Below are positions 2,612 to 63,888 of a DNA stretch of 64,000 nt, piece after piece. The stretch's first letter is position 1. Every line of letters starts with the position of its first letter. The position numbers and the translations under genes are program-made. The stretch is taken from IMG/VR virus record IMGVR_UViG_3300032236_002285, positions 62,001 through 126,000 of that record; one strand, given 5' to 3'. The notes beneath the pieces were generated by a model. That model was given only the letters and a program-made list of their open reading frames with translations. It did no database searches and had not been told where the DNA came from.

Positions 2612-3967
2612 ATGGCTGATAAAAAATCTACACGAGTTAAATTTTCTGAAGAATTACATGATTTACTAAGAATCCTTGAGGATGATGGTAGTTATGTTGC
2701 TTTTGAATTACTTTGGTTAAATGAACCAGATTCAAAATATCATAATGGATTAGATGTTGAAGATGTTGATATATCCAAAACAAGATCTTGCTTAGATGTT
2801 AATATTAGAGGTAGAGTTCATCCTATGAAAATAGAAAACTTTATTAAATATTTTTTCAAAAATTATTTCCAATCAGATGTTGTTTTAGATTTTATTGAAC
2901 AATATAACATATTAGCTGGTGGTGGCGGTGAGTTACAAGATACAAGAACTAAAATTATACCAGAACCTTTTAAATATAATCCTAAAGACGTTAGAAGTAC
3001 ATTTATTTCATTAGTTACTAAAACATATCCACACGGACATGAAGAAGAAGTTATGCAGTTTATGCCTAAATTGGATAAAGATTCTGTGGGTAACTATTAT
3101 AAAATTATTGGTGAGAATCCAACAACTATGTTTACATCTCACTTAGATACTGCTGATAGAAAACAAGGAATCACTAAACTTCTTTCAATGAAAGACGAGA
3201 ATGGTGATGAAATTATCTATACTGATGGTTCTACTATCTTAGGTTCGGATGATAAAGCCGGTGTTGCTGTTATGTTATATATGATGGCTCATAATATACC
3301 GGGTCTTTATTATTTCTTTATGGGTGAAGAAAGAGGTGGTATCGGTTCAGGTTTACTTTCTTCTGTGTATGATGAAACTCCTTATCTTAAAAATATTAAA
3401 AGGTGCGTTTCATTTGATAGAAGAGATGTTAAATCGGTTATTACTTCTCAATTAGGTAGAACTTGTTGTTCTGATACATTTGGTACTGCTTTATGTAAAG
3501 AATACAATGCTCATGGTCTTAAATTATCTTTAGATCCTACGGGTATATACACAGATTCTGCTTCATTTATTGACCAGATTCCTGAGTGTACTAACATTTC
3601 TGTTGGTTATTATAATGAGCATACTGGTAAAGAAAGACAAAACATTAACTATTTAGAGAGATTAGCTAAAGCAAGTGTTTTGGTTAATTGGAATTCTCTA
3701 CCAACTGCTAGAAAGATAGGAATTGATGAGGAAGTTATCAGAAAATATGGTAGATTCATTAATGAGCTAAAGGCTACTCCAATGGGAATTGATATCAAAG
3801 TTATGGCTGAAGAAGGTGGTGGTACTGTAATTGCTTGTGATATGGAAGAGGGTTATATTGATGCAACGTATGAGTCACTGACAATGTTACAATTCTTATT
3901 AAATAAACATAAAATCAATCAAACAGTATATTTTGATGGTGATTATATAAAAATAGATTTATCATAA
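2612..3967 (+). CDS. M20/M28-family Zn peptidase-like protein (paralog 1)
   Basis: FTSHLDT, LGSDDKAG, GEERGGIGS, SFDRR, TDS and HT metal-ligand motifs. Confidence 0.8.
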   Translation: MADKKSTRVKFSEELHDLLRILEDDGSYVAFELLWLNEPDSKYHNGLDVEDVDISKTRSCLDVNIRGRVHPMKIENFIKYFFKNYFQSDVVLDFIEQYNILAGGGGELQDTRTKIIPEPFKYNPKDVRSTFISLVTKTYPHGHEEEVMQFMPKLDKDSVGNYYKIIGENPTTMFTSHLDTADRKQGITKLLSMKDENGDEIIYTDGSTILGSDDKAGVAVMLYMMAHNIPGLYYFFMGEERGGIGSGLLSSVYDETPYLKNIKRCVSFDRRDVKSVITSQLGRTCCSDTFGTALCKEYNAHGLKLSLDPTGIYTDSASFIDQIPECTNISVGYYNEHTGKERQNINYLERLAKASVLVNWNSLPTARKIGIDEEVIRKYGRFINELKATPMGIDIKVMAEEGGGTVIACDMEEGYIDATYESLTMLQFLLNKHKINQTVYFDGDYIKIDLS

Positions 3968-4404
3968 TGAAACTTAAAAAATTCAACCAGTTATTTGAAC
4001 GTGAAGGATTTGATGATATAGACCAACCTTTTGACGAAGAAGACGAATATTCAATTCCTGAAGAAGATGATTATGATCCAAGTAGTGATGATGATATGGA
4101 ACATCTTTGTTACTTATTAAGACAAATGTTTAATAATAGCAATATTGATGTTAGTGTTGAGAATAGCGGACTGGATGTATCTATAACTGCTCAGTTTGAT
4201 AGAAAAGAATCATTAAAAGATGTTATAAGACTATTTGAGATTGTTAAAAAGATTAAAAAAGATATTCTTGCTCAGTATGATTCTTCATATGAGATGTGGG
4301 AAACAAGATCTGGTAATCCTATGATTACTTTTGATTTTAATTTAGATGAAGATTCTGATAAAGATGGTGTTACTACTGGTGATAAAGATGATTATCCTTG
4401 GTAA
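3967..4404 (+). CDS. Hypothetical acidic protein with CTS-like N-terminus
   Basis: ORF overlapping the upstream stop; starts MKLKKFNQLFERE. Confidence 0.7.
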   Translation: MKLKKFNQLFEREGFDDIDQPFDEEDEYSIPEEDDYDPSSDDDMEHLCYLLRQMFNNSNIDVSVENSGLDVSITAQFDRKESLKDVIRLFEIVKKIKKDILAQYDSSYEMWETRSGNPMITFDFNLDEDSDKDGVTTGDKDDYPW

Positions 4405-4450
4405 TATTTAAATAAATTTCAAACTTTTTTCTATTTTGAAATATTATATA

Positions 4451-4458
4451 TATCTTTG
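4451..4458 (+). promoter_or_regulatory. Bacteroidota-type -7 element upstream of tmRNA
   Basis: TATCTTTG ends 18 nt before the tmRNA 5' end; no canonically spaced -33 TTTG. Confidence 0.55.
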
Positions 4459-4476
4459 TAAGATAATAACACACTT

Positions 4477-4855
4477 GGGGATGTTTTAGAATTGATTTGC
4501 GGATTAGTGGTAGTTATGCAGGTATCGGATGGTTAAGTACCCGATTAATAAATTAAGTGATAAATTTGTAAACGGCAACGTTAATGAAGTAGCAAGCAAT
4601 GAAGACTTAGTATTTGCTCTACAAAACAACATGCTCTTGGTAGAAGAGCCAGCAACTGTCTAACAGCAGTTCCTGTAGAAAAATTCTCCACCTTGTATCA
4701 CACAAGAATAAAATGGTGAAATGGGTTTTTGTTACTTATTAGAGTTTATCAAAAAAAGTAAATAGTTTGTGAGTTTAGAAAAATTTAACAAGCCTGTAAA
4801 TGAATAATTATTAATAACTGAAAAAGACACGATGGGCAGTACATCGTCATCTCCA
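4477..4855 (+). ncRNA. ssrA: tmRNA; tag ORF ~4574-4663 encodes GNVNEVASNEDLVFALQNNMLLVEEPATV
   Basis: 5' GGGGATG pairs with 3' CATCTCC including G3-U; discriminator A; T-arm cgatg-GGCAGTA-catcg; internal open tag frame; 379 nt. Confidence 0.9.
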
Positions 4856-4860
4856 CAAGT

Positions 4861-21943: not shown

Positions 21944-22465
21944 ATGAGATATTTAAAAACTTATGAATCATTTCAAGTAAATGAAGAATTGTTTGGTGGT
22001 GCTAAATTACCTTCAAGAGAAGAATTGAAAAAACTAATGGATGAGGCTAGAAATAAACCAGAGTATAAACAAGCTTTTGCTAATTTAGATTCTGAGTTGA
22101 GTAAACTATCACCTGAAGCTAAGGCTGATTTAAAAGAACTTTCAACTAAAAGTCCTGAAGAAATTAAACAAGAACTTCCTGATTCAGTAGAAAAAGAAAT
22201 GACAAACGAAAGTCTTATTCTTGAAGAAATAGATTGGAAAAATATTGCTTCTAAATTCTTTAAGGGTTTAGGTATCTTAACCGTATCTAGTGGATTGATA
22301 TCATCTATAATCGCTGTAATTAAAATGAGTATTACAGGTTCTGGTTATTCTGAATTATTTGGATCACAAGCAGGTCACGTTGCTGGTATGGGAATGGTTA
22401 CTATGTTATGTGCCCTTATTCCAATGGCAATCTCTATCTTATTAGAACCTAAAGAAGCACGTTAA
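21944..22465 (+). CDS. CTS-like N-terminus plus two transmembrane segments
   Basis: MRYLKTYESFQVNEE; hydrophobic C-terminal helices; TAATATATA upstream. Confidence 0.7.
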   Translation: MRYLKTYESFQVNEELFGGAKLPSREELKKLMDEARNKPEYKQAFANLDSELSKLSPEAKADLKELSTKSPEEIKQELPDSVEKEMTNESLILEEIDWKNIASKFFKGLGILTVSSGLISSIIAVIKMSITGSGYSELFGSQAGHVAGMGMVTMLCALIPMAISILLEPKEAR

Positions 22466-24396: not shown

Positions 24397-25053
24397 TTAT
24401 TTTACTCTAATAGTTGTAAAATCCAAGTTAGGTAGTTTTTCCTTAACTACTTTAGTAGCTTTTTTGATATATTTAGCGTTGTCATCGTAAAATATAGCTT
24501 TAGTAAACCCTGTTTCATTTATTAACTCAACTATCTTTTCGCCTTTCCAAGTTCCTAGGTTTTTAGCACCGGTTGGGGCCATATGTAAACCGTACTTTGG
24601 AAGTTTTAGACCAAGTTGTTCTAATCTACTAACAATTTTGTTTCTGATAGATTCATCTCTAGCTGTAATTATACATTTGTTTTCAACTGATTTGTATAAA
24701 TCAGATATTTCTGTTTTAAGAGATTTTGGTAAACTAATATCAGCTGTGTGAAAAGAATTTGGTGAGAATAGATATAATCTATCACCTTTTCTAATCCAAT
24801 TAGCATATTCTTTATATTTGTGTTCTGGATCTAAAATATAGATTTTACCATCTTGCCATTTTAAATCTTTTAATGAGACACCTATTCTATTAACTGATTG
24901 ATTTAATAAATCTTTGATTGTTATATCTTCTTTTAAATATTCTATTGCTAAATCTTCAAAGCTTGGGGAATTTACAAGCGTGTCATCAAAGTCAAAAATG
25001 TAAAATACATTCTCACTTGTAAAATCATTGTAGTTTTTAATCTTCATATTCAA
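24397..25053 (-). CDS. HAD-superfamily hydrolase with CTS-like N-terminus
   Basis: FDFDDTLV, IITAR, FYDD. Confidence 0.75.
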   Translation of the reverse strand: MNMKIKNYNDFTSENVFYIFDFDDTLVNSPSFEDLAIEYLKEDITIKDLLNQSVNRIGVSLKDLKWQDGKIYILDPEHKYKEYANWIRKGDRLYLFSPNSFHTADISLPKSLKTEISDLYKSVENKCIITARDESIRNKIVSRLEQLGLKLPKYGLHMAPTGAKNLGTWKGEKIVELINETGFTKAIFYDDNAKYIKKATKVVKEKLPNLDFTTIRVK

Positions 25054-36996: not shown

Positions 36997-37284
36997 ATGA
37001 AAATAGATAAATTTAATGAATTTGTTAGCTCTGAAATATACACTCTTATAGAAAAATCTGAATCCACGCCATTGTCTGATCCAATAGCTATTTCACAAAG
37101 AGATTCCTACAAAAAGTTACTATCTATGGGTGATAAAGTACTACCATATATTTTAGAAAGAAAATCATACATATGGAATATAGCTCTTAAAGAGTTAACC
37201 GGTGTTGAACCTATTGGTGATAAGAGTAGTGAGATAATGGAATTTTGGGAAAAATGGTCAATTGAAAATGGTTATAAGAAGTGA
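36997..37284 (+). CDS. Hypothetical protein with CTS-like N-terminus
   Basis: MKIDKFNEF; TAATATATA upstream. Confidence 0.7.
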   Translation: MKIDKFNEFVSSEIYTLIEKSESTPLSDPIAISQRDSYKKLLSMGDKVLPYILERKSYIWNIALKELTGVEPIGDKSSEIMEFWEKWSIENGYKK

Positions 37285-37696: not shown

Positions 37697-38386
37697 GTTG
37701 GTTATTTCAATTTCATCTATTGTGAATTGTTTAGTTGTTTTATTATATGATCCTACTCTGTATAAATCATCATTAACGAAAACACCAACTTGAATATAGT
37801 CTTCATCATCAACGGTATCCATATATCTATCAAAGTCTATATTATCCTCTTTATAAATATCTCTAAGTCTTTTTAATCCAGCTAAATATTCTTTATCTTG
37901 AAAATTAATATAATCTGTATAAGATTTTTTCAATTCTTCTGTACTTATTTCATTGCTAATAAAATATATTTCAAAAGTATGAACAACTCTTTCATGTCCG
38001 TTTGTTTTATCTATATTATATTCACTTTTTTCAAGTTTTAATCCTTCTTCTTCAACTCTATCTATCATTTCTTCTACAGAAATTTTAATAGTATTTAGAT
38101 TTTCAAGAACCTTATTGAAATTATTTTTACCTGGAACTAAACTGTATTGAATTTGACAAGTGTAAAGTAATCTATATTTTTCATTATCATCAACCTCAGT
38201 ATTAACAGCATGACCTTTTGAGTCAATTAGATATCTGTAGTTATTAACTCTAGCAAAGTCTTTGACATCAACTAAACTATCATTGAATATATCGGTTGAT
38301 ATAGCTTTAGATTTTATGAAATCCGAATATTCTTGAGATGTTCCAAAAGACTCTTTAATAAAGTCATTATACCTCTTTAATCTCAT
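37667..38386 (-). CDS. Hypothetical protein with CTS-like N-terminus
   Basis: MRLKRYNDFIKES. Confidence 0.7.
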   Translation of the reverse strand: MRLKRYNDFIKESFGTSQEYSDFIKSKAISTDIFNDSLVDVKDFARVNNYRYLIDSKGHAVNTEVDDNEKYRLLYTCQIQYSLVPGKNNFNKVLENLNTIKISVEEMIDRVEEEGLKLEKSEYNIDKTNGHERVVHTFEIYFISNEISTEELKKSYTDYINFQDKEYLAGLKRLRDIYKEDNIDFDRYMDTVDDEDYIQVGVFVNDDLYRVGSYNKTTKQFTIDEIEITNSIDDYIFRD

Positions 38387-47979: not shown

Positions 47980-48546
47980 TTATTTATTGTAGGTTAATTT
48001 GTAGATAGTTCTATATAACAAGGCTACTACCTCGTCTACTAAATTATGTAGATGTGTATCTTTCTCATCAAAGCATTTTCTTTCTGCTCTTATCCATTCA
48101 ACAACTTCTTTGAAGTAGTCTAATTTATCTTTAGATTTAGTATCTGTTGTATCAATTTCGTCATATCCTTCAAGTAGACCATATTGACCTTGATAAACCT
48201 CAACAATTTCATCAATATGTTCAATTACGCCTTCATAGTAAGCTTCTAAAGCTAGGTGAGCAGCGTGTGAACCCATATCACCTTTAACTGTCCAGTGATA
48301 AACTTGAGCCATTTCTCTTGATTGTAATAATTTAGACATGAATTTAACAACGGTTACATCACCTGTTGTTTCTGTTTTTTCTTCTTCGGCCTCATCTTTA
48401 TTATCTTCGGCTTCTTTAGTCTTAGATTGACCAGCCATTAACTTAATCAATTCTTCTTTTGACATATCTTCATAGTTTTCAGGAAGATTAGCTTCTGATT
48501 CGAATATCTTCTTTTTAACTGGTTTAAAATCTGAAAATTTTTTCAT
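47980..48546 (-). CDS. Ferritin/Dps-like four-helix protein with CTS-like N-terminus
   Basis: YHWTVKG, HLALEAYYE, IDEIVEVYQG, YKLT. Confidence 0.7.
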   Translation of the reverse strand: MKKFSDFKPVKKKIFESEANLPENYEDMSKEELIKLMAGQSKTKEAEDNKDEAEEEKTETTGDVTVVKFMSKLLQSREMAQVYHWTVKGDMGSHAAHLALEAYYEGVIEHIDEIVEVYQGQYGLLEGYDEIDTTDTKSKDKLDYFKEVVEWIRAERKCFDEKDTHLHNLVDEVVALLYRTIYKLTYNK

Positions 48547-48582: not shown

Positions 48583-48795
48583 TTATAAATCCGATATTCT
48601 TTCATCGGTTTGTTCAATATTATCTATTGTATAGTTAGAACCGTTTTCAATTGATGACAAAGCTGAATCTGCTAAGTATCCTGCTTCACCTTCATTTTCG
48701 GCTGGTATGATTAACTCAACTTGAGCAATTACTTTGTAGTATTTCTGATTTGAGTTATTTTCTAGTATTTTACTGAATTTCTTCATTTTTATCAT
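48583..48795 (-). CDS. Small hypothetical protein with CTS-like N-terminus
   Basis: MKKFSKILEN. Confidence 0.65.
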   Translation of the reverse strand: MIKMKKFSKILENNSNQKYYKVIAQVELIIPAENEGEAGYLADSALSSIENGSNYTIDNIEQTDERISDL

Positions 48796-49891
48796 TTATT
48801 ATTTTTGATATTTTCTTTTTAATGTTGTCACCATTTTTATTGAACTGTCTACCCCAATACTCAATAAACTGTTTACAACTCATTTTTCTGAAAGTATCTA
48901 AAGGTATAATTGGTTTTGCATTTTGGTCTTTTACTTCTTTTTCATAAACTTCAACCCACATTTGTTTTAACTTATCAGCAACTTCTTTTTCATCTTTACA
49001 ACCAGCTAGAAGCTCATTACTCGTATCTTTCCAATTGTAGTGAGCCGATATTTCATTAATTAGATATACATAAAACATATCAGCATCAAATTTTTGCATC
49101 TTATCAAATGTTTGCCAAATTTTAAATTCTTTAACATCCTTCTCAGGATATTTTGTAATAAAGTATTTAATTTCTTGAACATTGGCGTTCATCTCGTGTG
49201 ATTCACTCATATAAATATACTTTAGAAATTCACTATTCCATTTTTGCCAAATAGCTTTAGGGAATTTCCATTTGTTATTTTCAGCGTATGTAAGAGATGT
49301 GTTAAAGCTTCTATCATAAATAGGTCTATACTCACCTCTTTTTGTTCCTTTTTTAGTTCTTTTATAGTGTTCGTAACAGTGATTTAACTCATGATATAAA
49401 GTAGAAGCTATCCCATCTATTATAGATTCTTTATGTTCTGGTTTATTTATATCAAAATTAATTTTATCAATATCAATACCAACAGATAATTGAATAATAA
49501 GTCCGTGATCTGTAACTTGTTTTACTGGTTTAACAATTTTAGAATAATTTTTCCAGTTTTTATTACCAAATCCTGAGGCATAACCACCTATGGCTGTGTA
49601 ATTTGCATAACCATATAAAGAATTAAATTTTAAAGGCATCATTTTTTTGAAATCTAATATTAGTTCAAATCCAACTACTGGGAAGTCAGCATATAATTGT
49701 TTATCCTTTATATAAGGAACTAATGTTCTGTATTTTATCTCAACTCTTTCGTCTAATTTTGTTTCTTTTGAATTTAAAAAATCTATAAAACTATAGTATG
49801 TTTTATTCTCAAGAACATCAACAAACATTAAACTTGATTCGGAAACACCATGTCTTTCTAGTAGAAACTGTTTAAAATTAAAAATCCCCAT
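48770..49891 (-). CDS. HExxH (zincin-like) protein with CTS-like N-terminus
   Basis: LYHELNH plus downstream ESHEMNA. Confidence 0.55.
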   Translation of the reverse strand: MGIFNFKQFLLERHGVSESSLMFVDVLENKTYYSFIDFLNSKETKLDERVEIKYRTLVPYIKDKQLYADFPVVGFELILDFKKMMPLKFNSLYGYANYTAIGGYASGFGNKNWKNYSKIVKPVKQVTDHGLIIQLSVGIDIDKINFDINKPEHKESIIDGIASTLYHELNHCYEHYKRTKKGTKRGEYRPIYDRSFNTSLTYAENNKWKFPKAIWQKWNSEFLKYIYMSESHEMNANVQEIKYFITKYPEKDVKEFKIWQTFDKMQKFDADMFYVYLINEISAHYNWKDTSNELLAGCKDEKEVADKLKQMWVEVYEKEVKDQNAKPIIPLDTFRKMSCKQFIEYWGRQFNKNGDNIKKKISKIINDKNEEIQ

Positions 49892-50921: not shown

Positions 50922-51167
50922 ATGAAATTAATAAAAAAGTTTGAAGAATTTGTTTACGGTGCTGGTTCACCTGCTCCTTCTACAAATCCTACTACAGCAC
51001 CTACAAAGCCTGCTACAAGACCTTCTACAAAGCCTGGTAAACCTAGTCCAATTAGAAGAGATAAGCCAGCTGTTGAACCAGCTCCTAAAGCTGAGAAGAA
51101 ATTAAAAACAGCTACAATGGAAGAGGTAATTCATAAGTTTGCGGACTTAACAAATCAAAAATACTAA
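50922..51167 (+). CDS. Pro/Thr-rich protein with CTS-like N-terminus
   Basis: Start revised to MKLIKKFEEF; PAPSTNPTTAPTKP. Confidence 0.7.
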   Translation: MKLIKKFEEFVYGAGSPAPSTNPTTAPTKPATRPSTKPGKPSPIRRDKPAVEPAPKAEKKLKTATMEEVIHKFADLTNQKY

Positions 51168-51168: not shown

Positions 51169-52686
51169 ATGAAAGATTTTAAAAAATTCTTAGAAGAAGT
51201 AACTATAAAAGGCAACCCTGGTGTTCCAAACGAAGGTGATAAAAGACCTGGTGATAAAGACTATCTTAAAGATACTGAAGCAAGAGCTAAGGCTCGTTTA
51301 GGTTTATCTGGTCGTGAACACCCTATGCAAATTGGCCCTAGATTAATGCAGTTGGTTGATCAATCTCAACAAGCAACTCGTGGACACGAAGAAGAGTTAG
51401 AAAACTTAGCTAAGGAAATTATTACACAAAATTATGGTGAGATTCTTGATGGTGTTGAACTTGATATTAAATTATTAAGATCTGGTTCTCAAATTGCTCA
51501 ATTTATGCAAGACTGTGAAGAAGAACAAGATGAAGAAAAAGAAGCTCCAAAGTTTAGACAAATTCAAGATCCTGCTACAATTAATAAAATACACAAGGCT
51601 AAATTAGGTAATAATATTATTCAAGGTGAAGCTAAAAACACTAAACATATTATTGCTACTGAAGAAGTTAAGAATGGTTTGATTGATATTTTTGGACCAA
51701 AAGCTGATCAGATTTTAAATATGTGGAAAGAAATTAGTAATCTAGCTGATAAAATGGATTGGATTATTCCTATTGAAGTTAAGGCTGATATGATGGAAAG
51801 AGCTCCACAAGGTATGGCTGGTGCTGTTTCTGTTGATTGGAAACCTAAACAAAAAGAAGAAGAGGAAGAAAAAGAAGAAAGTGATGAAGACTTTGCTACT
51901 AGAATTCTTAATGACTTAGCAAATAGTGAAGAACCAAATGAAGAGGATAAAGAAGAATTTGGTGAAGAAGTTCAAGGTGCTACTCCAAGAATTAGAGCTC
52001 GTGGTATTGACTTTCCAATGTTGATTCATGAAACTGTTAAAGGTATTTATGAATTGATTGCTTCAATTCAATTTCCAGCTGAAGGTTCTTCAGAAGAAGA
52101 AGTTAAAATGGCACAAACTGTTAAATTAAATGTTTCTTCATTTGAAGATGAAGCTGAGGATTTCAGAACAGGTCCAGAGATTGCTGCTGACTTTAGAGAT
52201 TTTATCAATGAGAATCCAAATGTTGAACATCCAAATATGAGAGCATTTATTTTTGGTAAATTAATGGATTCAAATTACATTTCTGATGCTGACTTCTTAA
52301 AATTATTTAGAGGTATCTTAAATAAAACTCCAGAGGCTCGTAGAAAAATCGATGAGATGATTGATGAGATTAATCAAGAGTTAAATAGATATGAATTGGG
52401 TCAAGTTCTTGATGTTGAAGAACCATATGAACAAGAGCATGAAGAAGATGATGATACTATGATGCCAGGTAAAGCTGAGCAAGAGGTTCCTCAAAAAGCG
52501 GCTGAAGTAGATTATTCTGAATTGACTCAAAGAGAATTACAAGAATTAATTGATGATGCTTTGGATGAAGGTGATTATGATAAAGTTAGAATGTTATCTC
52601 AATATATGAAAGAAGGTAAAGAAATTTATCTAAAAGAATTAGAAAGAATTAATGAAGGTCATAACTTTCATACAAGAAGAAAATAA
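51169..52686 (+). CDS. Large acidic putative virion protein with CTS-like N-terminus
   Basis: MKDFKKFLEE; FPMLIHETVKGIYE. Confidence 0.7.
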   Translation: MKDFKKFLEEVTIKGNPGVPNEGDKRPGDKDYLKDTEARAKARLGLSGREHPMQIGPRLMQLVDQSQQATRGHEEELENLAKEIITQNYGEILDGVELDIKLLRSGSQIAQFMQDCEEEQDEEKEAPKFRQIQDPATINKIHKAKLGNNIIQGEAKNTKHIIATEEVKNGLIDIFGPKADQILNMWKEISNLADKMDWIIPIEVKADMMERAPQGMAGAVSVDWKPKQKEEEEEKEESDEDFATRILNDLANSEEPNEEDKEEFGEEVQGATPRIRARGIDFPMLIHETVKGIYELIASIQFPAEGSSEEEVKMAQTVKLNVSSFEDEAEDFRTGPEIAADFRDFINENPNVEHPNMRAFIFGKLMDSNYISDADFLKLFRGILNKTPEARRKIDEMIDEINQELNRYELGQVLDVEEPYEQEHEEDDDTMMPGKAEQEVPQKAAEVDYSELTQRELQELIDDALDEGDYDKVRMLSQYMKEGKEIYLKELERINEGHNFHTRRK

Positions 52687-52695: not shown

Positions 52696-54651
52696 ATGAA
52701 ATTATTTAAGTATAACCAATTTTTAGGTGATAAGCCATTAAATGAGAATCTAGACAAAGCTAAAAAGTTCTTGAAAGATAGATTTTTATTAAAGACTGCT
52801 GCTACTGATCTTGGATTTGTTCAAGGTGAGTTAAAAGCTCAGTTAGATCATAAAGAAAAAAGAAGCTTAGTTTTAGGTGATTTTACACCAGAACAACAAG
52901 AAGAGATAAAAGGTAAACTAAGAACTCTTAAATTAAAAGATGATGAAGTAAGAACTATTGAGAGAGATCCTGAGTTCTTAAAAATCAGAGAAGCTTTAGG
53001 TCAGCAATATATTGGTTGGACTTATCCTTTTACTTATTTCTACTTTGTTGAGATGGTTTCTATGGATGAACTATTCACAAATGAAGGAAGTATATTCAAT
53101 AAACTTATTGAGTATAAAGGTTTGTTAGATAAACTACCTAAGAAATTTGACCAAAACTTTATTGACACAAATATTCCTAACAATGCTGAGGTTTTAATTG
53201 ATGGATTAGATTCTTTAGAAGATTATAGAAAGATTAAGAAGGTAATTGATAAGTTAACACCGGTTCTTAAAAAAGACTATATGGATTCACCAGAAGTTAT
53301 TAAAGGACAATTTGCCGATGTTTGTAGAGGTTTTGACCAATTAGGTGGTGAAGATGAAGTTAAAAAAGAAAAACTATGGAAGTCATTCTTTGGTGAAGTT
53401 AGAACTATTGATACTGACCAAGTTATTCACGGTAAAGCTTATAAGAAAGGTGATAAAAGATATTTTGGACCACTTAACAGATATACTAACATTAGAGAGT
53501 TTATTAAAGCGGCTCAAAATTATTTAAAATCATCTGAGAATGAAACGGTTCTTGCTTTCTATGATAAGATTAATGCTTGTAACGAAAAATATGGTACACA
53601 AGGCGCTGATACAGTATTTGAAGAAAATGGTATTTTAATTATTGAAGTTAAATCTTTCCAAGCTAATCAATTCTTAAATGGTCACACAAGACACTGTATT
53701 AAAGATTACTCTTCACAATGGGAAAACTATGTGGCTTCACATAACAATAAACAATATTATATTTATAACTTTAATATTCCTCAATATGATAACCTCTCAA
53801 CTATTGGTATCACAATTGAACCTGGTCAAAAAATTAGAGCTTGTCACCTTAAAGATGATGCTGGATATTCGAGTAGTATTAAATCTACTTTGTCTAAATG
53901 GCAAAAAGAATATGATATTAAAGAAGACCTTTTTGCTCAACTTAAACCTATGACTGAAGAAGAAATTAGAAGAAGAGAAAGAGCTAAACTTGCTGAAAGA
54001 GAAATTATTAAGAAAGGTTTATCAATTGAACAAATTAAACAATATGTTAGAGAAGATGGTGCTAATATCAATAAAGATAATTGTGTAGCTCTTTTACATG
54101 CTGTTGAAGAAAACAACCACGAGAAAGCTAAAGTTATTTTAGAATTAGGTGGTTCTCCAAACTTGAGAAGTAAAGCAGATGCTATTATTAATAAGGCACA
54201 AGACTTAGATATGATTAAACTACTTGTTGCTAATGGTTCTGAATTAACAGGTGAGGTATTTAATAACATTTGTAATGACCTTGAGGCAGTTGAATATTGC
54301 TTAAAACAAGGATTAGATCCAAACTTTGATAACTCACTTCCAATCAGAAGATGTTGTAAAGGTGGTTGGAAATCTAAAGATGATATTGGTGAAGGTTATT
54401 TTGATGTATTCCAGTTACTTGTTAAATATGGTGCTAGATTAGCAGACGAGGGTGGTAGAAATATGGCTATCAAATGGGCGGCTGAATATGGTAGATTAAA
54501 CTTTATTGATTATATGATTAGTAAAGGTGTTAAAACAGGTTTCAAAGCAGCTTTATCTTGGTTAAATCATAGTAGAAAAACACCAGATAATGTTAAGAAA
54601 ACAACGGTTGCTTATCTTGAAGATAAAATTAAACAATACGGTGATGTATAA
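52696..54651 (+). CDS. Ankyrin-repeat-containing protein with CTS-like N-terminus
   Basis: ALLHAVEENNHEKAKVILELGGSPN, IKLLVANGS, AIKWAAEYGRLNFIDYMISKG. Confidence 0.7.
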   Translation: MKLFKYNQFLGDKPLNENLDKAKKFLKDRFLLKTAATDLGFVQGELKAQLDHKEKRSLVLGDFTPEQQEEIKGKLRTLKLKDDEVRTIERDPEFLKIREALGQQYIGWTYPFTYFYFVEMVSMDELFTNEGSIFNKLIEYKGLLDKLPKKFDQNFIDTNIPNNAEVLIDGLDSLEDYRKIKKVIDKLTPVLKKDYMDSPEVIKGQFADVCRGFDQLGGEDEVKKEKLWKSFFGEVRTIDTDQVIHGKAYKKGDKRYFGPLNRYTNIREFIKAAQNYLKSSENETVLAFYDKINACNEKYGTQGADTVFEENGILIIEVKSFQANQFLNGHTRHCIKDYSSQWENYVASHNNKQYYIYNFNIPQYDNLSTIGITIEPGQKIRACHLKDDAGYSSSIKSTLSKWQKEYDIKEDLFAQLKPMTEEEIRRRERAKLAEREIIKKGLSIEQIKQYVREDGANINKDNCVALLHAVEENNHEKAKVILELGGSPNLRSKADAIINKAQDLDMIKLLVANGSELTGEVFNNICNDLEAVEYCLKQGLDPNFDNSLPIRRCCKGGWKSKDDIGEGYFDVFQLLVKYGARLADEGGRNMAIKWAAEYGRLNFIDYMISKGVKTGFKAALSWLNHSRKTPDNVKKTTVAYLEDKIKQYGDV

Positions 54652-55480: not shown

Positions 55481-55882
55481 CTACCACTCTCTTTCTTTAT
55501 CTTTTGGTTTGTGTCCTATTTTAGATATTACTAATTCATAGTAGGCATCAGTTTGACCAAAATCTGAAGAATACACATATAAATTAAACTCTTTTAGATG
55601 TTCATTTACATCATTAATTAGTTCAAATATCTTTGGTTCAACATAATGTAAAACAGATAAATCAATCATAGATTCATATCCGGACTCATTAAATACAATA
55701 ATAAAACAATTATCATCTTTTTCAATTAAAGATGATTGTAAAGAATCTTCTACATAGTATTCTAATTTAGGGAACTCATCAGTTATATGATAAAGTATCT
55801 CACTTAAATCTTGATATGATATATCAAAATCATTTTGTAGTGAAAATCTTTCTGTTATAAATTGATTGTATTTCTTTATCAT
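55481..55882 (-). CDS. Hypothetical protein with CTS-like N-terminus
   Basis: MIKKYNQFITE. Confidence 0.7.
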   Translation of the reverse strand: MIKKYNQFITERFSLQNDFDISYQDLSEILYHITDEFPKLEYYVEDSLQSSLIEKDDNCFIIVFNESGYESMIDLSVLHYVEPKIFELINDVNEHLKEFNLYVYSSDFGQTDAYYELVISKIGHKPKDKEREW

Positions 55883-55884: not shown

Positions 55885-56358
55885 TTAAACTAAGCTAAGG
55901 ACTATAGTTCTCAAATCTTTCATCCCTACGTTCATTTTTGTTTTTTCTTTGTATTCACCTTTAAGATACTGTTCAAGTTCTTCCCAGGATAAGAGTTTAT
56001 CACTTAGTCCACCAAATGATTTTTCAATATAGTATAACATTTTTACTCCTGATATTTCTTTTTCAGATATAAGATATTTTATTCTAGGTGTTACGAAGTC
56101 AATAAACTTATCATATTTTGACTTTATTTCATCTATATTATACTCATCTTTTAAACGTCTTCTATTATACTCTTCTGAATCATGATATATCTTGTCAATT
56201 AAAGCAAATACTATTGATGGTCCACGATCACTAAAGTTTTTAGAATAGTAGCAAACAGGAATACCAAAGTATTCATTGATATCCTCAATAAGGTCAACAA
56301 CTAATATTTCTAAATCATCTTTAGATTCGTTTAGAAATTGATTATATTTCTTTATCAT
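55885..56358 (-). CDS. Hypothetical protein with CTS-like N-terminus
   Basis: MIKKYNQFLNE; TAATATATA-cttt-ATG. Confidence 0.7.
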   Translation of the reverse strand: MIKKYNQFLNESKDDLEILVVDLIEDINEYFGIPVCYYSKNFSDRGPSIVFALIDKIYHDSEEYNRRRLKDEYNIDEIKSKYDKFIDFVTPRIKYLISEKEISGVKMLYYIEKSFGGLSDKLLSWEELEQYLKGEYKEKTKMNVGMKDLRTIVLSLV

Positions 56359-56373
56359 AAAGTATATATTAAT

Positions 56374-59911: not shown

Positions 59912-60298
59912 TTAAATATAATCATCATCATCAAAGTCATGAAATGTTTTTAGATTAATGAAGTATTTTTTACCATCTTCAGTTTCTATATTAAGCAGAT
60001 GACTAATACTTTCATCATCATCTTCGATAGTTACATACATATCAGTAACATCTTTTTTATTTTCGTTTAATAAAGATTCTTCAACCTTTCCAGGTATTTC
60101 TAAATATTGATCCAATACTTCTTTAGTTTGATGATCAGTTTCATCAAATTTAACCTCATTATCATAAAGGCTAACTTTCTTATCAGCAATCAACTTTTGT
60201 AAAAGCGGCTCGCTTGTAAATAAACTCACTTCTTCTGGAGTAAGTTTTACTGATTTTGAGTGTGATTCCTTAATGAAATCTGCGTATTTCTTTATCAT
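59912..60298 (-). CDS. Hypothetical protein with CTS-like N-terminus
   Basis: MIKKYADFIKES. Confidence 0.7.
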   Translation of the reverse strand: MIKKYADFIKESHSKSVKLTPEEVSLFTSEPLLQKLIADKKVSLYDNEVKFDETDHQTKEVLDQYLEIPGKVEESLLNENKKDVTDMYVTIEDDDESISHLLNIETEDGKKYFINLKTFHDFDDDDYI

Positions 60299-61049
60299 TG
60301 TTTTCTGTTTGAGGTTTTATTTTATAAAATAATATAACTGCTAATATTAAAATATTAGTAGCGTAATTTAATAGTAATGGTAAATCTAATTTATCATAAA
60401 CATATGCTAAAGCAAAGATTTCACCGAATGCCCAAAGAAGAACAAACCCCCAAGAAATTCCGTGAGAATGTTTATCTTTGATTGATTGCCAAGCTTGTGG
60501 AATTCCACAAATAGCTAAACATATAGAACCTAACCAACCAAGAATTTCAAATAGTGACATTCCTTTTGTTTGTTCTGATATACCAGCCGCTGAAATTTCA
60601 TCCAAATTTTTTGGTTCAATCTTATAATCGTATTTATTTTCAATATGTGATGATAGCTTACTAAATAATTCTTTGAACTTTTCTTGATCATTATTTTTTA
60701 TATTAGATTTAATTTCATCTAATAAAGCAGATAATTCAGCGTCTTTAGAAATATCTTCTTTTTTTCTTATATCAGAAATTTCTTGAGCTTTATTCTTAAA
60801 AACAATAACACCATCTTTTTCAGCAGTAATAGTTGTTGGTATTATATCTTTACTTTGAGACATAGCCGGAGTTGATGTTAGAAGTGACCCAGCTAATGAA
60901 GCTCCTATTAAACCTTTCTTCAAATCTAATTCTTCTTTCACCTTGGTTACTTTAACTTTAGGATCTGGCATCCAACCATATGTCTTTTTAGATGGTTTAG
61001 GATTGAAATTTGATTTCAAAAATTGTTGATATGTTTTTACCTTTTTCAC
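60270..61049 (-). CDS. CTS-like and signal-like N-terminus fused to a PQ-loop/SemiSWEET domain
   Basis: GWLGSICLAICGIPQAWQSIKDKHSHGISWGF...LLLNYATN; GTG start. Confidence 0.8.
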   Translation of the reverse strand: MKKVKTYQQFLKSNFNPKPSKKTYGWMPDPKVKVTKVKEELDLKKGLIGASLAGSLLTSTPAMSQSKDIIPTTITAEKDGVIVFKNKAQEISDIRKKEDISKDAELSALLDEIKSNIKNNDQEKFKELFSKLSSHIENKYDYKIEPKNLDEISAAGISEQTKGMSLFEILGWLGSICLAICGIPQAWQSIKDKHSHGISWGFVLLWAFGEIFALAYVYDKLDLPLLLNYATNILILAVILFYKIKPQTENNDKEIRRFH

Positions 61050-61060: not shown

Positions 61061-61582
61061 TTAATTTTCATTATCATTTTCATCTTCAATTAAGTCAGCT
61101 GCTTTATTCATATTGATTTTAATATGATCAATTCTTTTGGCTTCTTTATCATTCTCATATACTGATTTGACCAATTCAACTAATTCTTTAAGTATTTTTG
61201 GATTAGCTTTACAATTTTCAGGTTCTCCTTCACAAATAATATTTAACTTATAGAATTCTTTATTATTATATTTTGAAATTTTTTTACTTGCTAAAAATTC
61301 CTGACTTTGTAAGTCAAAACCACCAGATTTGAAAGAAATAACAGCCCAGAGCTTAATTGGTGTATCTTCAAAATCAACTGTCCATTTATCAACTTTATGA
61401 CTTGTTTGTCCATGAATCGCATAGCCACCATCGTTTTGCGTACTAGTAAATTCAATCTTGTATGGTGAAATATCTTTAACTTTCTTTAAACGAGCTATAT
61501 ACTCTAAAGCGATTTTATCATCTTCAGTTGGTTGACTCTTAAAGAAGTCAAAGAAACCTTCATATGTTTTTAGATTCTTCAT
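61061..61582 (-). CDS. Hypothetical protein with CTS-like N-terminus (paralog of the N-terminal part of 63085)
   Basis: MKNLKTYEGFFDFFK..DDKIALE..RLKKVK; AADLI. Confidence 0.7.
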   Translation of the reverse strand: MKNLKTYEGFFDFFKSQPTEDDKIALEYIARLKKVKDISPYKIEFTSTQNDGGYAIHGQTSHKVDKWTVDFEDTPIKLWAVISFKSGGFDLQSQEFLASKKISKYNNKEFYKLNIICEGEPENCKANPKILKELVELVKSVYENDKEAKRIDHIKINMNKAADLIEDENDNEN

Positions 61583-62151: not shown

Positions 62152-62175
62152 AACCTCTCAATTGAGAGGTTTTTT
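62150..62175. terminator. Bidirectional terminator
   Basis: aaaacctctc-aatt-gagaggtttttt. Confidence 0.85.
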
Positions 62176-62176
62176 A

Positions 62177-63073
62177 TTAAAATCCAAAACACTTTGATAT
62201 ATTCTTATAATGCTTAACTTTTCCGTGATGATGGAATAGTTTAATATGTGGGAATTTAATTTTAATTCTGTGATATTCTTGAGATTTAACATCCTTACTT
62301 AAATAGTAAGTTTTTGATTCTTCCGGTGATATTTTTTTAATAGTATTAGATTTAATTACTACATCATTCTCTAAGTAAATAATTTTTACAGTTACAAATC
62401 TTGCTGATGGATCTTGTTTTCCTTGTCCCATTTCAAAAAGATGTGCAGTATCAATTAAGCTATCATCAATACCTTCATTCTCAATGATGTATTTTGAAAT
62501 AGATTCACATCTTGCTTTAGCTAAACCTTTATTATTTGGTTCGTAACCTTTTGCTTTAAGTTCGTTTTGTAGTTTTATTGACAAACCTTGTTTATCAGTT
62601 GATGATTGAATTTGAATACCAATGATTGTATGGTTACTTGATTCAATATTATTAATTACTTGTGAAACACTATCAGCCATTTCAGGTGAAATAGTATAAA
62701 CGCCAGAAGCAAAATATTGATTATCGCCAAAAATAATCTTTTCACCTTTTATAACTGTTTCAGGTGCTGTTTCTGTCAATTCTTTAAAAAGTGTATCAAC
62801 AACTGTTGAGTCTAAGTTATAACCTTTTTTTTGTAATCTTTCTAATGATTTTTCATCAGTTACTTTTTTATGTAAAGTTTTTGTAACTTCTTTACCAGGC
62901 CACTTAACCTCGATGCCACTTTTGTTTACTTTTATAGGTCCAGGTCCACTTGGTGATGCCTTCATTTGACCGGGTAATAATGAACCAGCAGCTATAGCAG
63001 TACCTAAAAGAGCATCTTTCCAACCCTCTTCCTCATTGATTTGAAATTCATCAAATTTTTTAATATTCTTCAT
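62177..63073 (-). CDS. OmpA-like C-terminal domain protein with CTS-like and signal-like N-terminus
   Basis: YFASGVYTI, SSTDK, NKGLAKARCESISKYI, RFVTV. Confidence 0.65.
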   Translation of the reverse strand: MKNIKKFDEFQINEEEGWKDALLGTAIAAGSLLPGQMKASPSGPGPIKVNKSGIEVKWPGKEVTKTLHKKVTDEKSLERLQKKGYNLDSTVVDTLFKELTETAPETVIKGEKIIFGDNQYFASGVYTISPEMADSVSQVINNIESSNHTIIGIQIQSSTDKQGLSIKLQNELKAKGYEPNNKGLAKARCESISKYIIENEGIDDSLIDTAHLFEMGQGKQDPSARFVTVKIIYLENDVVIKSNTIKKISPEESKTYYLSKDVKSQEYHRIKIKFPHIKLFHHHGKVKHYKNISKCFGF

Positions 63074-63084
63074 AAGTGTATATA

Positions 63085-63888
63085 TTATTTAAATTTATTT
63101 GGGAATATATGTCTCCACTCGTGACCTTGTGGAACATCTGAGACTTTAACACCAAATATCTTTTTTTCTGGACAAGTGTCCTTACCATCCATTAAGAAGT
63201 TATTATTACAAGCCCAAACTTCTACATTTCTTTGTAGTAATTGACCTACTGAAAAAGGAAATCTAATTCCTGTTTCATTTTCAATACCAGTGATTCTACC
63301 ATCTGGTGATTTAGTAACAACTATTTCTAATCTTGGGTTTCTTTTATTAGTGAATTTAACTTCTCTTTCGTGTATAGACTCATCAATTAAATCAGCCGCT
63401 GGATTGATTTCAGTTTGAATTCTATCCATTCTTTTTCTTTCGTTATCTTCTTTATAGATTTTATCTATTAGTTTGAATAATTTAATTCTATAAGATTCTT
63501 TAGATCTAATTCTTTCACATAAACCGGAATTATTACCAATAAATAGTTTCCATTTATTTACACACTTTTCTTCTCTTGCTGGAAGTCCAGTATCTGTGTA
63601 TACTAGAGTATGTCTATCATTTGATATAATTAAATCAACATCATCAAATCTAACAACATATATAACGCTATAATATTCTGATTTAACTCCATTTTCAACA
63701 CTATCTGCTGCTTTAGACATCCAAGCAGGTAACCTCATTTCTTCACTCTGTATATCATGAATTTCATATGGATTATTGTCTTTGACTTTTTCAAGACGAT
63801 GTATCATATCCAATGTGATTTTATCATCATTGGTATCTTTCTTAAAGTAATCTAAGAACCCTTCATTATAAGATTTTAAGTGTTTCAT
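63085..63888 (-). CDS. Hypothetical protein with CTS-like N-terminus
   Basis: MKHLKSYNEGF; paralog of 61061 plus an extra C-terminal domain. Confidence 0.7.
   Translation of the reverse strand: MKHLKSYNEGFLDYFKKDTNDDKITLDMIHRLEKVKDNNPYEIHDIQSEEMRLPAWMSKAADSVENGVKSEYYSVIYVVRFDDVDLIISNDRHTLVYTDTGLPAREEKCVNKWKLFIGNNSGLCERIRSKESYRIKLFKLIDKIYKEDNERKRMDRIQTEINPAADLIDESIHEREVKFTNKRNPRLEIVVTKSPDGRITGIENETGIRFPFSVGQLLQRNVEVWACNNNFLMDGKDTCPEKKIFGVKVSDVPQGHEWRHIFPNKFK

What the first reader, a model, noticed from the sequence alone, without database searches (positions are those of the whole stretch)
3967..63888. At least 22 ORFs start with a T4 capsid-targeting-sequence-like peptide: a large candidate injected proteome
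Seen: N-termini fit M-(K/R)-x-(I/L)-K-x-(F/Y)-x-x-F-x(0-4)-E, e.g. MRYLKTYESF..NEE, MIKKYNQFITE, MIKKYNQFLNE, MKLIKKFEEF, MKDFKKFLEE, MKNLKTYEGF, MKNIKKFDEF..NEE, MRLKRYNDFIKE, MKIDKFNEF, MGIFNFKQFLLE. Most lie just after, or in operons behind, the TAATATATA motif. Known: T4 internal proteins carry the CTS MKTYQEFIAE, are packaged into proheads, cleaved after Glu by gp21 and injected with the DNA. Inference: about a quarter of the genes here encode head-packaged cargo, including enzymes.
Basis: partly seen in the sequence, partly recalled or inferred. Interest (0 to 1): 0.7.

Follow-up and report, generated by a model that had tools for sequence, protein, structure and literature searches.

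The report
T4-type capsid-targeting tags, massively expanded
About one protein in ten of this 476-kb freshwater megaphage begins with the same 11-residue peptide that phage T4 uses to load proteins into its head, so the phage probably packages, and may inject, dozens of unrelated proteins with its DNA. No experiment has tested this.

Summary
In the window, 13 ORFs carry a strong N-terminal tag, about 17 are probable, and about 21 fit only a loose pattern.

Across the 476-kb genome, 56 of 636 genes are tagged. In internal sequence the tag is almost absent.

- **Selection level:** the tag is conserved as a peptide, not as DNA.
- **Cargo:** it sits on mutually unrelated, mostly family-less proteins.
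- **Conservation:** it is kept in orthologues of the sister phage LR756502 (105 of 965 genes) and occurs in LR756501.
- **Match to T4:** a scoring matrix built only from this phage ranks T4's ipIII, ipII, gp61.1 and ipI as the top 4 of 1,992 T4 ORFs.
- **Head machinery:** the phage has a T4-type head module. Its gp21-family protease is fused to a scaffold made of 14-residue repeats, each ending in (L/I)-A-E.
- **Regulation:** 51 of 54 tagged genes lie behind the TATATATA promoter-like motif, which also precedes the portal, protease, capsid and sheath genes.

Best reading: these are true T4-type capsid-targeting propeptides, expanded from about 4 in T4 to 50-100 per genome. Packaging, cleavage and injection are inferred, not shown. 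I found no published description.

The parts
1..38 (+). 3' end of the 720-aa prohead protease-scaffold fusion gene (genome 59876-62038)
   Evidence: phrog_207 head maturation protease 1e-31, with a weak PF03420 match. The GE..HP and SSRxxG motifs are shared with T4 gp21. Residues ~260-450 form ~13 tandem 14-aa units, each with an (L/I)AE site.
115..1809 (+). Major capsid protein, T4 gp23 type
   Evidence: PF07068 Gp23 4.5e-27. The N-terminal KKWAPVLE aligns with T4 KWKPLLE. TATATATA motif 24 nt upstream.
3967..4404 (+). Tagged ORF, weak tag (MKLKKFNQLFE)
   Evidence: PSSM 5.9; L-F-E ends at residue 11. Its LR756502 orthologue scores 9.7.
21944..22465 (+). Tagged ORF, strong tag (MRYLKTYESF..NEE)
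Evidence: Motif 25 nt upstream. No family.
24397..25047 (-). Tagged HAD-like enzyme (MKIKNYNDFTSE, then the DxDxT motif)
   Evidence: PSSM 19.3. DUF2608/HAD-like. 550 homologues, and the tag is conserved in the aligned sample of 11.
36997..37284 (+). Tagged ORF (MKIDKFNEF)
   Evidence: PSSM 10.3. Motif 17 nt upstream.
37667..38386 (-). Tagged ORF, strong tag (MRLKRYNDFIKE)
   Evidence: PSSM 21.8; I-K-E ends at residue 12. Lies in an operon behind the motif gene 38383-39219.
47980..48546 (-). Tagged DUF5856 protein (phrog_858, annotated as a starvation-inducible transcriptional regulator) (MKKFSDF...IFE)
   Evidence: PSSM 10.4. PF19174 1e-16 and phrog_858. Motif 24 nt upstream.
48770..49891 (-). 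Tagged ORF, moderate tag (MGIFNFKQFLLE)
   Evidence: PSSM 7.9; L-L-E ends at residue 12. Motif 5 nt upstream.
50922..51167 (+). Tagged small ORF (MKLIKKFEEF); true start is the internal ATG of the longer TTG ORF
   Evidence: PSSM 14.8. Motif 22 nt upstream. Its orthologue is tagged.
51169..52686 (+). Tagged ORF, moderate tag (MKDFKKFLEE)
   Evidence: PSSM 7.1. Same operon as 50922.
52696..54651 (+). Tagged ankyrin-repeat protein, moderate tag (MKLFKYNQFLGD)
   Evidence: PSSM 7.0, while its orthologue scores 12.0. Ank_2 6e-7.
55481..55882 (-). Tagged ORF, strong tag (MIKKYNQFITE)
   Evidence: PSSM 22.8; I-T-E ends at residue 11.
55885..56358 (-). Tagged ORF, strong tag (MIKKYNQFLNE)
   Evidence: PSSM 22.6. 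Motif 4 nt upstream.
59912..60298 (-). Tagged ORF, strong tag (MIKKYADFIKE)
   Evidence: PSSM 21.7; I-K-E ends at residue 11. Its orthologue is tagged.
60270..61049 (-). Tagged PQ-loop membrane protein, GTG start (MKKVKTYQQFLKS)
   Evidence: PSSM 19.7, with no Glu site. PF04193 2e-11. Motif 5 nt upstream.
61061..61582 (-). Tagged ORF (MKNLKTYEGFFDF)
   Evidence: PSSM 14.5. Motif 7 nt upstream.
62177..63073 (-). Tagged OmpA-like protein (MKNIKKFDEFQINEE, then a hydrophobic stretch)
   Evidence: PSSM 14.5; fits the strict pattern. PF00691 1e-7. Motif 5 nt upstream.
63085..63888 (-). Look-alike N-terminus (MKHLKSYNEGFLDYF), register shifted by one
   Evidence: PSSM -1.8. Similar by eye only. Motif just upstream.
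1890..2576 (+). NFACT-R protein next to the capsid gene, with an internal tag-like stretch at 2175-2215
   Evidence: PF05670 6e-17. Internal MKESKIMNFKLFTE scores 8.3. The ~130-aa relatives begin with the tag.

Best explanation
The shared N-terminus is a T4-type capsid-targeting propeptide. It has two forms: M-(K/R)-(H/Y)-(L/I)-K-x-Y-x-(I/L)-F-E, and M-I-K-K-Y-x-x-F-I-x-E.

Proposed mechanism (inferred):
1. Tagged proteins are made from the same promoter class as the head genes.
2. The short amphipathic tag binds them to the scaffolding core, which here is the repeat region of a protease-scaffold fusion protein.
3. The gp23-type shell closes around the core.
4. The gp21-family serine protease then cuts after Glu, usually at residue 11-12 in an (L/I)-x-E context, and also cuts the scaffold at its (L/I)-A-E sites every 14 residues.
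5. The mature cargo stays in the head with the DNA and is available for ejection into the host.

Shown here: the tag's existence and enrichment, its selection at peptide level, its attachment to unrelated proteins, its equivalence to the T4 CTS, the T4-type head module, and the shared promoter motif.

Inferred: binding to the scaffold, cleavage, retention in the head, and injection.
For: - **Enrichment at N-termini:** about 60-fold per position over internal sequence; 56 of 636 genes tagged.
- **Peptide-level selection:** synonymous codon use inside the tag matches genome usage, and the L/I column uses 7 codons.
- **Unrelated cargo:** after removing 20 residues, 67 of 72 BLAST groups are singletons. 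Nearly all window cargo has no PHROG family.
- **Equivalence to the T4 CTS:** MKTYQEFIAE, quoted in bioRxiv 10.1101/2021.01.19.427310, scores 19.6 bits, above all 117,843 internal 10-mers. The top 4 of 1,992 T4 ORFs are ipIII, ipII, gp61.1 and ipI.
- **T4-type head module:** portal PF07230 5e-59, protease phrog_207 1e-31 with the conserved His and Ser motifs, Gp23 PF07068 5e-27.
- **Scaffold repeats:** about 13 units of 14 residues, each with (L/I)AE. The same repeats occur in LR756502 and LR756501, which also carry tags. PTm1 has neither.
- **Glu site:** (L/I)-x-E ends at residues 6-20 in 64% of tagged proteins against 19% of untagged, with the mode at residue 11 and Ser most often next.
- **Co-regulation:** 51 of 54 tagged genes lie behind the TATATATA motif, which also precedes the portal, protease, capsid and sheath genes. 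The DNA polymerase, helicases, RNR and ThyA lack it.
- **Conservation:** tag state is kept in orthologues. The tag is 64% identical, the next 18 residues 48%.
- **Solubility:** none of the 56 tagged proteins has an N-terminal hydrophobic segment.
- **Precedent:** T-even internal proteins are diverse proteins that share only the CTS (PMC3012670).
Against: - No virion proteome, N-terminal sequence or transcript data exist; only DNA metagenome runs hold the window.
- About a third of tags lack a clean (L/I)-x-E. In the HAD-like family the Glu is often Asp.
- Mature parts are on average acidic, unlike the basic T4 internal proteins.
- Some cargo is unexpected for a capsid: a PQ-loop membrane protein, an OmpA-like protein, a possible tRNA synthetase, and DeoC and NUDIX enzymes.
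- Most promoter-proximal tagged genes have the motif 4-8 nt from the ATG, while head genes have it 21-30 nt away, so their timing may differ.
- UvsX and a homing endonuclease also carry the motif, so 'late' is not proven.
- Fifty to a hundred cargo species per head has no precedent.
Confidence: 0.62

Rival explanations
1. The tag is a real peptide signal, but for something other than head cargo. It could be a propeptide that the phage protease removes to activate or time the proteins in the cytoplasm. It could also be a handle for a chaperone, for another assembly site, or for turnover.
For: - A third of tags lack the canonical (L/I)-x-E.
- Several tagged proteins are housekeeping-type enzymes or membrane proteins.
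- Cargo is acidic rather than basic.
- The number of tagged species is very large.
Against: - The tag is statistically indistinguishable from the experimentally defined T4 CTS.
- It co-occurs with a T4-type protease-scaffold.
- The genes follow the promoter motif of the structural genes.
- I found no other targeting machinery to propose.
Confidence: 0.17
2. The conservation acts on the mRNA rather than the protein. The first ~30 nt would be an AU-rich element that helps transcription start or translation of leaderless late transcripts.
For: - 20 of 28 promoter-proximal tagged genes have the TATATATA motif only 4-8 nt before the ATG, so the tag codons would be the first transcribed bases.
- The tag is rich in residues with AT-only codons.
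Against: - Synonymous codons vary as in the rest of the genome.
- Substitutions are conservative at protein level (K/R, Y/F, I/L through 7 codons).
- 23 of the 51 tagged genes that lie behind the motif are operon-internal, with no motif of their own.
- About 45 genes with the same short spacing have no tag.
- T4 uses the same peptide with ordinary leaders, and its function there is at protein level.
Confidence: 0.06
3. The resemblance comes from common descent of one expanded gene family, or from low-GC amino-acid composition, and is not a functional tag.
For: - The genome is 30% GC, so K, N, I, Y and F are common.
- One large paralogous family with this N-terminus forms tandem arrays in IMG/VR contigs.
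Against: - Shuffled N-termini give about 1 match against 35 observed, and internal Met positions give 1 of 2,553.
- 67 of 72 groups are singletons once the tag is removed.
- Cargo spans 62-651 aa and includes ankyrin, HAD, NUDIX, DeoC and nucleotidyltransferase folds.
- IMG/VR hits fall into 38 unrelated groups.
Confidence: 0.03

Closest known systems
[quoted passage not shown]
   Same: - About 10 residues at the extreme N-terminus.
- The same K-x-(Y/F)-x-x-F-(I)-x-E signature, with mutual retrieval by the matrix.
- It ends in an (L/I)-x-E site of the kind the gp21 protease cuts.
- It is attached to otherwise unrelated, fast-evolving proteins.
- The phage has a T4-type portal, protease, scaffold and capsid protein.
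   Different: - 56-105 tagged proteins per genome, against about 4 in T4.
- Most tags carry two or three extra residues before the conserved Lys: M-(K/R)-(H/Y)-(L/I)-K, or M-I-K in the short form.
- The cargo is acidic on average and includes enzymes and repeat proteins.
- Function here is inferred, not demonstrated.
Hyperplastic internal-protein loci of T-even phages (Repoila et al. 1994, as summarised in PMC3012670)
   Same: - Diverse, lineage-specific ORFs that share only the CTS.
- Likely roles against host defences.
- Tagged genes cluster in arrays (genome 245-254 kb and 374-380 kb; LR756502 10-90 kb).
   Different: - The scale is far larger and the genes are spread over the whole genome.
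- Many tagged genes are conserved between phages whose capsid proteins are 69% identical.
- One, the HAD-like enzyme, has 550 homologues, the 120 listed being 74-91% identical.
Head-protein propeptides and ejection proteins of giant phages phiKZ, 201phi2-1 and SPN3US (PMC5694885, PMC7411985)
   Same: - Many different proteins are packaged in a large head and ejected.
- A gp21-related prohead protease removes N-terminal propeptides after Glu.
   Different: - Those propeptides are mostly 80-130 residues long and not a shared short motif.
- Here the tag is a uniform peptide of about 11 residues, of the T4 type.
T4 scaffold gp22 and protease gp21
   Same: - A protease domain with conserved His and Ser motifs.
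- A scaffold rich in (L/I)-x-E sites, such as T4 gp22's LIAE, KIAE and WLAEN.
   Different: - Here protease and scaffold are one 720-aa protein, as in Tenacibaculum phage PTm1.
- The scaffold is a regular array of 14-residue Y-S-E-Y-(L/I)-A-E-N-L-D-K-N-I units.

Membership tests
T4-type capsid targeting sequence (CTS) | A short (10-20 aa) peptide at the extreme N-terminus of the precursor | tested here: met
   The motif is anchored on the start Met and the conserved block ends at residue 11-13. The per-position rate is about 60-fold higher at N-termini than internally.
T4-type capsid targeting sequence (CTS) | Sequence like the T4 CTS MKTYQEFIAE | tested here: met
   The T4 CTS scores 19.6 bits on this phage's matrix, above all 117,843 internal 10-mers. 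The matrix ranks ipIII, ipII, gp61.1 and ipI as the top 4 of 1,992 T4 ORFs.
T4-type capsid targeting sequence (CTS) | Ends in a gp21-type cleavage site, (L/I)-x-E followed by a small residue | tested here: inconclusive
   Present in 36 of 56 (own genome) and 63 of 105 (LR756502) tagged proteins, against 19% of untagged. The mode is residue 11 and the next residue is mostly Ser. 91-94% have some Glu at residues 8-13, but a third lack the L/I. Cleavage itself was not testable.
T4-type capsid targeting sequence (CTS) | The phage builds a T4-type prohead: gp20 portal, gp21-family protease, scaffolding core, gp23 shell | tested here: met
   PF07230 5e-59; phrog_207 1e-31 with a weak PF03420 match and conserved His/Ser motifs; PF07068 5e-27; scaffold repeats with (L/I)AE sites.
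T4-type capsid targeting sequence (CTS) | A portable tag on otherwise unrelated proteins | tested here: met
   67 of 72 BLAST groups are singletons after trimming 20 residues. Pfam domains among the cargo are diverse.
T4-type capsid targeting sequence (CTS) | Tagged proteins are incorporated into proheads, processed, and present in virions | not testable with these tools
   No isolate, virion proteome or RNA run exists; only DNA metagenomes hold the window.
T4-type capsid targeting sequence (CTS) | Expressed while heads assemble | tested here: inconclusive
   51 of 54 tagged genes lie behind the TATATATA motif shared with the portal, protease, capsid and sheath genes and absent from replication genes. 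There is no transcript evidence, and the spacing to the ATG differs (4-8 nt against 21-30 nt).
T4 internal proteins IPI/IPII/IPIII (the mature proteins) | Small, basic, DNA-associated proteins homologous to the T4 IPs | tested here: not met
   Mature parts are on average acidic (-0.046 net charge per residue), have a median length of 172 aa, and match no IP family in PHROGs.
Long propeptides of phiKZ-like giant phage head proteins | Propeptides of roughly 80-130 residues, not a shared short motif | tested here: not met
   The conserved block is 11-13 residues. Identity falls right after it, and the HAD fold starts at residue 14.
Sec, Tat or lipoprotein signal peptides | A hydrophobic h-region after a basic N-terminus | tested here: not met
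   None of the 56 tagged proteins has a hydrophobic 19-mer starting in the first 40 residues, against 44 of 551 untagged.

The most novel reading that the evidence does not exclude
A whole clade of freshwater megaphages has turned the T4 capsid-targeting peptide into a general address label. This clade includes the 476-kb genome here, LR756502 and LR756501, and hundreds of IMG/VR fragments appear to belong to it too. Each virion would carry 50-100 different tagged proteins, about a tenth of the proteome. They include ankyrin-repeat proteins, a CCA-adding/poly(A)-polymerase-type nucleotidyltransferase, a kinase-like P-loop protein, and NUDIX and HAD enzymes, all delivered with the DNA as a pre-made takeover and counter-defence kit. 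The tag may work by mimicking one unit of the scaffold's own Y-x-E-Y-(I/L)-A-E repeat. If so, the injected proteome of uncultured T4-type phages could be read directly from sequence.
Probability: 0.4. Interest if true: 0.88.

Novelty: new variant of a known kind. Interest (0 to 1): 0.72.

Why it matters
- **What phages carry in:** proteins that enter the cell with the DNA act before any phage gene is expressed, and they are a main route for defeating host defences. T4 is known to package only a handful of such proteins.
- **A sequence-only predictor:** a tag that marks 50-100 candidates per genome in uncultured megaphages would give a large catalogue of candidate counter-defence and takeover proteins.
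- **Genome size:** it would help explain what some of the extra coding capacity of huge phages is for.
- **Protein packaging:** it would extend the T4 CTS packaging tool to new capsids.
- **Mechanism:** the 14-residue scaffold repeat with built-in cleavage sites gives a concrete, testable model of how the tag is recognised.

Tried and rejected
- **Complex prediction** of the protease plus repeat region (residues 1-460) with the tagged protein 55481-55882 returned 'no answer' (score 0.00, controls not run). It is evidence neither for nor against binding.
- **AlphaFold2** of the HAD-like tagged protein with 27 homologues gave a poor model (mean pLDDT 54.6). It shows only that residues 1-11 are not confidently part of the fold and that the first strand starts at residue 14. 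I made no fold search on it.
- **phmmer** of the protease domain against PDB sequences found nothing.
- **Sequencing runs:** the search found only DNA metagenomes (freshwater where labelled) and no RNA run, so promoter use and timing could not be checked.
- **Terminase:** Pfam PF17289 did not match the genome. The sheath and tube families matched only weakly.
- **Literature:** searches for the tag peptides, and for 'capsid targeting sequence' together with 'huge phage', found nothing. 'Mahaphage' returned 11 papers, none of whose titles or listed abstract openings mention a tag; I did not read them. Repoila 1994 is not held.
- **Capsid cleavage site:** the site expected by alignment with T4 gp23 (…LTE/AE) is not conserved in this capsid protein. 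Only the earlier …VLE at residue 20 is.
- **Scaffold mimicry:** the scaffold repeat scores poorly on the tag matrix, because it has Tyr where the tag has Phe and lacks the Lys. 'The tag mimics the scaffold unit' therefore rests only on the shared pattern [YF]xx[YF][LI]xE. Of its 62 occurrences in the proteome, 29 lie in the scaffold or at N-termini.
- **Rejected explanations:** signal peptide, paralogous family, and composition or chance.

Full report
**Context.** The window is bases 62,001-126,000 of a 476,236-bp virus record with 29.9% GC, standard genetic code and 94% coding density. By capsid-protein similarity it belongs with the largest known phage genomes. Identities are LR756502 69.5%, LR745206 68.8%, LR756504 53.5% and LR756501/LR756503 52%. 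More distant relatives are Tenacibaculum phage PTm1 and the Lak phages, both at 29%. Public runs that hold the window are DNA metagenomes, several labelled freshwater; none is RNA.

- All quoted N-termini are present at the stated ORF starts.
- Genome-wide, M.{0,3}[LIVMF][KR].[YF]..F fits 35 of 636 called N-termini. It fits 1 of 2,553 internal Met positions, about 1 per set of shuffled N-termini, and 8 of 1,329 non-gene ORFs.
- The core hexapeptide is about 60 times more frequent per position in the first 7 residues than beyond residue 25.
- I built a 10-column matrix from 47 seeds. At 8 bits or more it hits 60 ATG-anchored ORF starts against about 4.5 expected. At 14 bits or more it hits 43, against 1 of 117,843 internal positions.
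- Two forms appear. One is M-(K/R)-(H/Y)-(L/I)-K-(T/K/S)-Y-(K/E)-(I/L)-F-E. The other is M-I-K-K-Y-x-x-F-I-K-E.
- In the window, 13 ORFs score 10 bits or more, four score 6-8 bits, and the remaining claimed cases are loose look-alikes.
- The true share is therefore 12-20% of window genes and 9% of the genome (56 of 636), not a quarter.

**Is the conservation at protein or nucleotide level?**
- Inside the tag, synonymous codon use equals genome usage. For example, Lys is AAA:AAG 34:13 against 77:23% genome-wide.
- The aliphatic column is filled by seven different Leu and Ile codons.
- Substitutions are K/R, Y/F and I/L.
- Of the 51 tagged genes behind the motif, 23 sit inside operons with no motif of their own.
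- The conserved unit is therefore the peptide.

**Is it one gene family?** No.
- With the first 20 residues removed, 78 candidates fall into 72 BLAST groups, 67 of them singletons.
- Lengths run from 62 to 651 aa.
- Almost none of the window's tagged proteins matches a PHROG family.
- Pfam finds scattered, unrelated domains:
  - ankyrin repeats (52696-54651);
  - a HAD-like fold whose DxDxT motif starts 7 residues after the tag (24397-25047);
  - DUF5856, matching phrog_858 (47980-48546);
  - a PQ-loop domain (60270-61049);
  - an OmpA-like domain (62177-63073);
  - elsewhere in the genome, a PolyA_pol-type nucleotidyltransferase, an AAA_33/zeta-like P-loop protein, NUDIX, DeoC, and a weakly tagged Glu/Gln-tRNA synthetase.
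- Tagged proteins are depleted in hydrophobic segments. None of 56 has one near the N-terminus, against 44 of 551 untagged. They are mildly acidic.

**Comparison with T4.**
- The T4 CTS is MKTYQEFIAE. It is cleaved once and is sufficient to package foreign proteins (bioRxiv 10.1101/2021.01.19.427310; PMC5694885).
- T-even internal proteins are described as diverse defence-countering proteins that share only the CTS (PMC3012670).
- On the matrix built only from this megaphage, the T4 CTS scores 19.6 bits, higher than every one of 117,843 internal 10-mers.
- Scanning all 1,992 ATG ORFs of T4, the top four are ipIII and ipII (19.6), gp61.1 (19.0, a 54-aa hypothetical protein) and ipI (13.6).
- The short form here matches T4 residue for residue in spacing: K-x-Y-x-x-F-I-x-E.

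**The head machinery.**
- Just upstream of and at the start of the window lie a T4-type portal (PF07230, 5e-59), a 720-aa protein and a Gp23-type capsid protein (PF07068, 5e-27).
- The first ~230-330 residues of the 720-aa protein are a head maturation protease. The match is phrog_207 at 1e-31, with a weak PF03420 match.
- The GE..HP and SSRxxG motifs of that protease are invariant with T4 gp21 and PTm1.
- Residues ~260-450 of the same protein are about 13 tandem copies of a 14-residue unit, Y-(S/A)-E-Y-(L/I)-A-E-(N/H)-(L/V)-D-(K/N)-(N/S)-I-x. This places an (L/I)-A-E site every 14 residues.
- That is what a T4-like scaffold cut by a protease of (L/I)-x-E specificity should look like. T4 gp22 itself contains LIAE, KIAE and WLAEN.
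- Among tagged proteins, (L/I)-x-E ends at residues 6-20 in 64% (own genome) and 60% (LR756502), against 19% of untagged. The mode is residue 11 and Ser is the commonest next residue. Some Glu lies at residues 8-13 in 91-94%, against 33%.
- The heptapeptide pattern [YF]xx[YF][LI]xE occurs 62 times in the proteome. Eleven are in the scaffold and 18 are at N-termini.
- This suggests the tag resembles one scaffold unit. That remains an inference, because the scaffold unit itself scores poorly on the tag matrix.

**Regulation.**
- TAATATATA occurs 143 times, and 106 copies lie within 50 nt upstream of a gene in the sense orientation.
- It precedes the portal, protease-scaffold, capsid and sheath genes and a 1,943-aa protein at 21-30 nt.
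- It is absent from the DNA polymerase, helicases, DnaB, RNR, ThyA and a methyltransferase.
- It also precedes UvsX and a homing endonuclease.
- Tagged genes have it directly in 28 of 54 cases, against 123 of 582 (p=3e-6). They lie behind it in 51 of 54 cases, against 206 of 582 (odds ratio 31, p=2e-18).
- Most promoter-proximal tagged genes have the motif only 4-8 nt from the ATG, which implies leaderless or near-leaderless messages. So their timing could differ from that of the head genes.

**Relatives.**
- LR756502 (fetched whole) has 105 tagged genes of 965, with consensus MKHLKTYKIFES.
- Of 350 reciprocal best-hit pairs, tag state is largely conserved, and most disagreements are near the threshold.
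- In tagged pairs, residues 1-12 are 64% identical, residues 13-30 are 48%, and the rest 55%.
- The first 400 kb of LR756501 has 33 tagged genes with a shorter consensus, MIKKFKLFE.
- PTm1 has none at 10 bits or more, and its scaffold repeat is different.
- In IMG/VR, a degenerate DNA pattern for the long form hits at least 119 stretches on many contigs. The encoded proteins fall into 38 unrelated groups plus one 40-member paralogous family in tandem arrays.
- The scaffold repeat hits at least 120 stretches.
- Next to those scaffold genes, relatives encode a ~130-aa tagged protein. It corresponds to the NFACT-R gene that follows the capsid gene in the window.
- The HAD-like tagged enzyme has 550 homologues; the 120 listed are 74-91% identical. 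The tag is kept in the 11 I aligned, although its Glu is often Asp.

**Verdict.** The most economical reading is that these are genuine T4-type capsid-targeting propeptides, recognised by a T4-type scaffold and protease. The family has expanded from about four proteins in T4 to 50-100 per genome in this megaphage clade. The steps from tag to packaging, cleavage and injection are inferred by analogy with T4. No data on virions exist. The main doubts are:
- the imperfect cleavage sites in a third of the tags;
- the acidic and sometimes membrane or housekeeping nature of the cargo;
- the different promoter spacing;
- the unprecedented number of cargo species.

I found no publication describing this. 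I rate it a new variant of a known kind, of high interest if confirmed.

Noticed in passing
genome 59876-62038 (locus L222:876-3035; ends at window 38): The prohead protease and the scaffold are fused in one 720-aa protein. Its scaffold part is about 13 tandem 14-residue units, Y-S-E-Y-(L/I)-A-E-N-L-D-K-N-I-x, followed by an acidic His/Glu-rich tract. The same repeat occurs in LR756502, LR756501 and at least 120 IMG/VR stretches. PTm1 has a different repeat.
   Followed up: partly
whole window, e.g. 1865-1885, 13000-13016, 56359-56380, 59190-59208: The TAATATATA(C) promoter-like motif sits at two preferred distances from the ATG. One is 4-8 nt, which implies leaderless transcripts. The other is 17-30 nt and is often followed by ATAAAAA. 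Head and tail genes use the long spacing, and most tagged genes use the short one.
   Followed up: partly
T4 NC_000866 18966-19130 (locus L070): T4 gp61.1, a 54-aa hypothetical protein next to the primase gene, has a CTS-like N-terminus, MKTFKEFIKED. It scores as high as the internal proteins on the megaphage matrix.
   Followed up: no
window 1890-2576: An NFACT-R (PF05670) protein is encoded directly after the capsid gene. In relatives it is ~130 aa and starts with the tag. In the window the tag-like stretch (MKESKIMNFKLFTE) is internal at 2175-2215, behind a ~95-aa extension. So either the start is mis-set or this copy carries a long leader.
   Followed up: partly
IMG/VR loci L176 and L129; own genome 468985-470158: Tandem arrays of up to eight paralogues begin MKHIKPYKIFE(S/N)xSPNFPTTREEVIEVC...YTINDDLSID. 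This is the one clear case where the tag heads an expanded family.
   Followed up: no
locus L005:4656-6536 (genome 56656-58536, minus strand): A full-length RNase II/R-type exoribonuclease (RNB 1e-110 with CSD and S1 domains) is inserted between the portal and protease genes. A homing-endonuclease-like ORF and an endonuclease VII-like ORF lie beside it.
   Followed up: no
window 2612-3967 and 16143-17237: Two paralogous phrog_4191 'peptidase' genes are present. One lies immediately after the capsid and NFACT-R genes and has the TATATATA motif upstream.
   Followed up: no
genome 262861-264486: A Glu/Gln-tRNA synthetase carries a ~52-aa N-terminal extension with a weak tag (MDMKYIKTRNRFLAE). Its LR756502 orthologue lacks the extension.
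   Followed up: no
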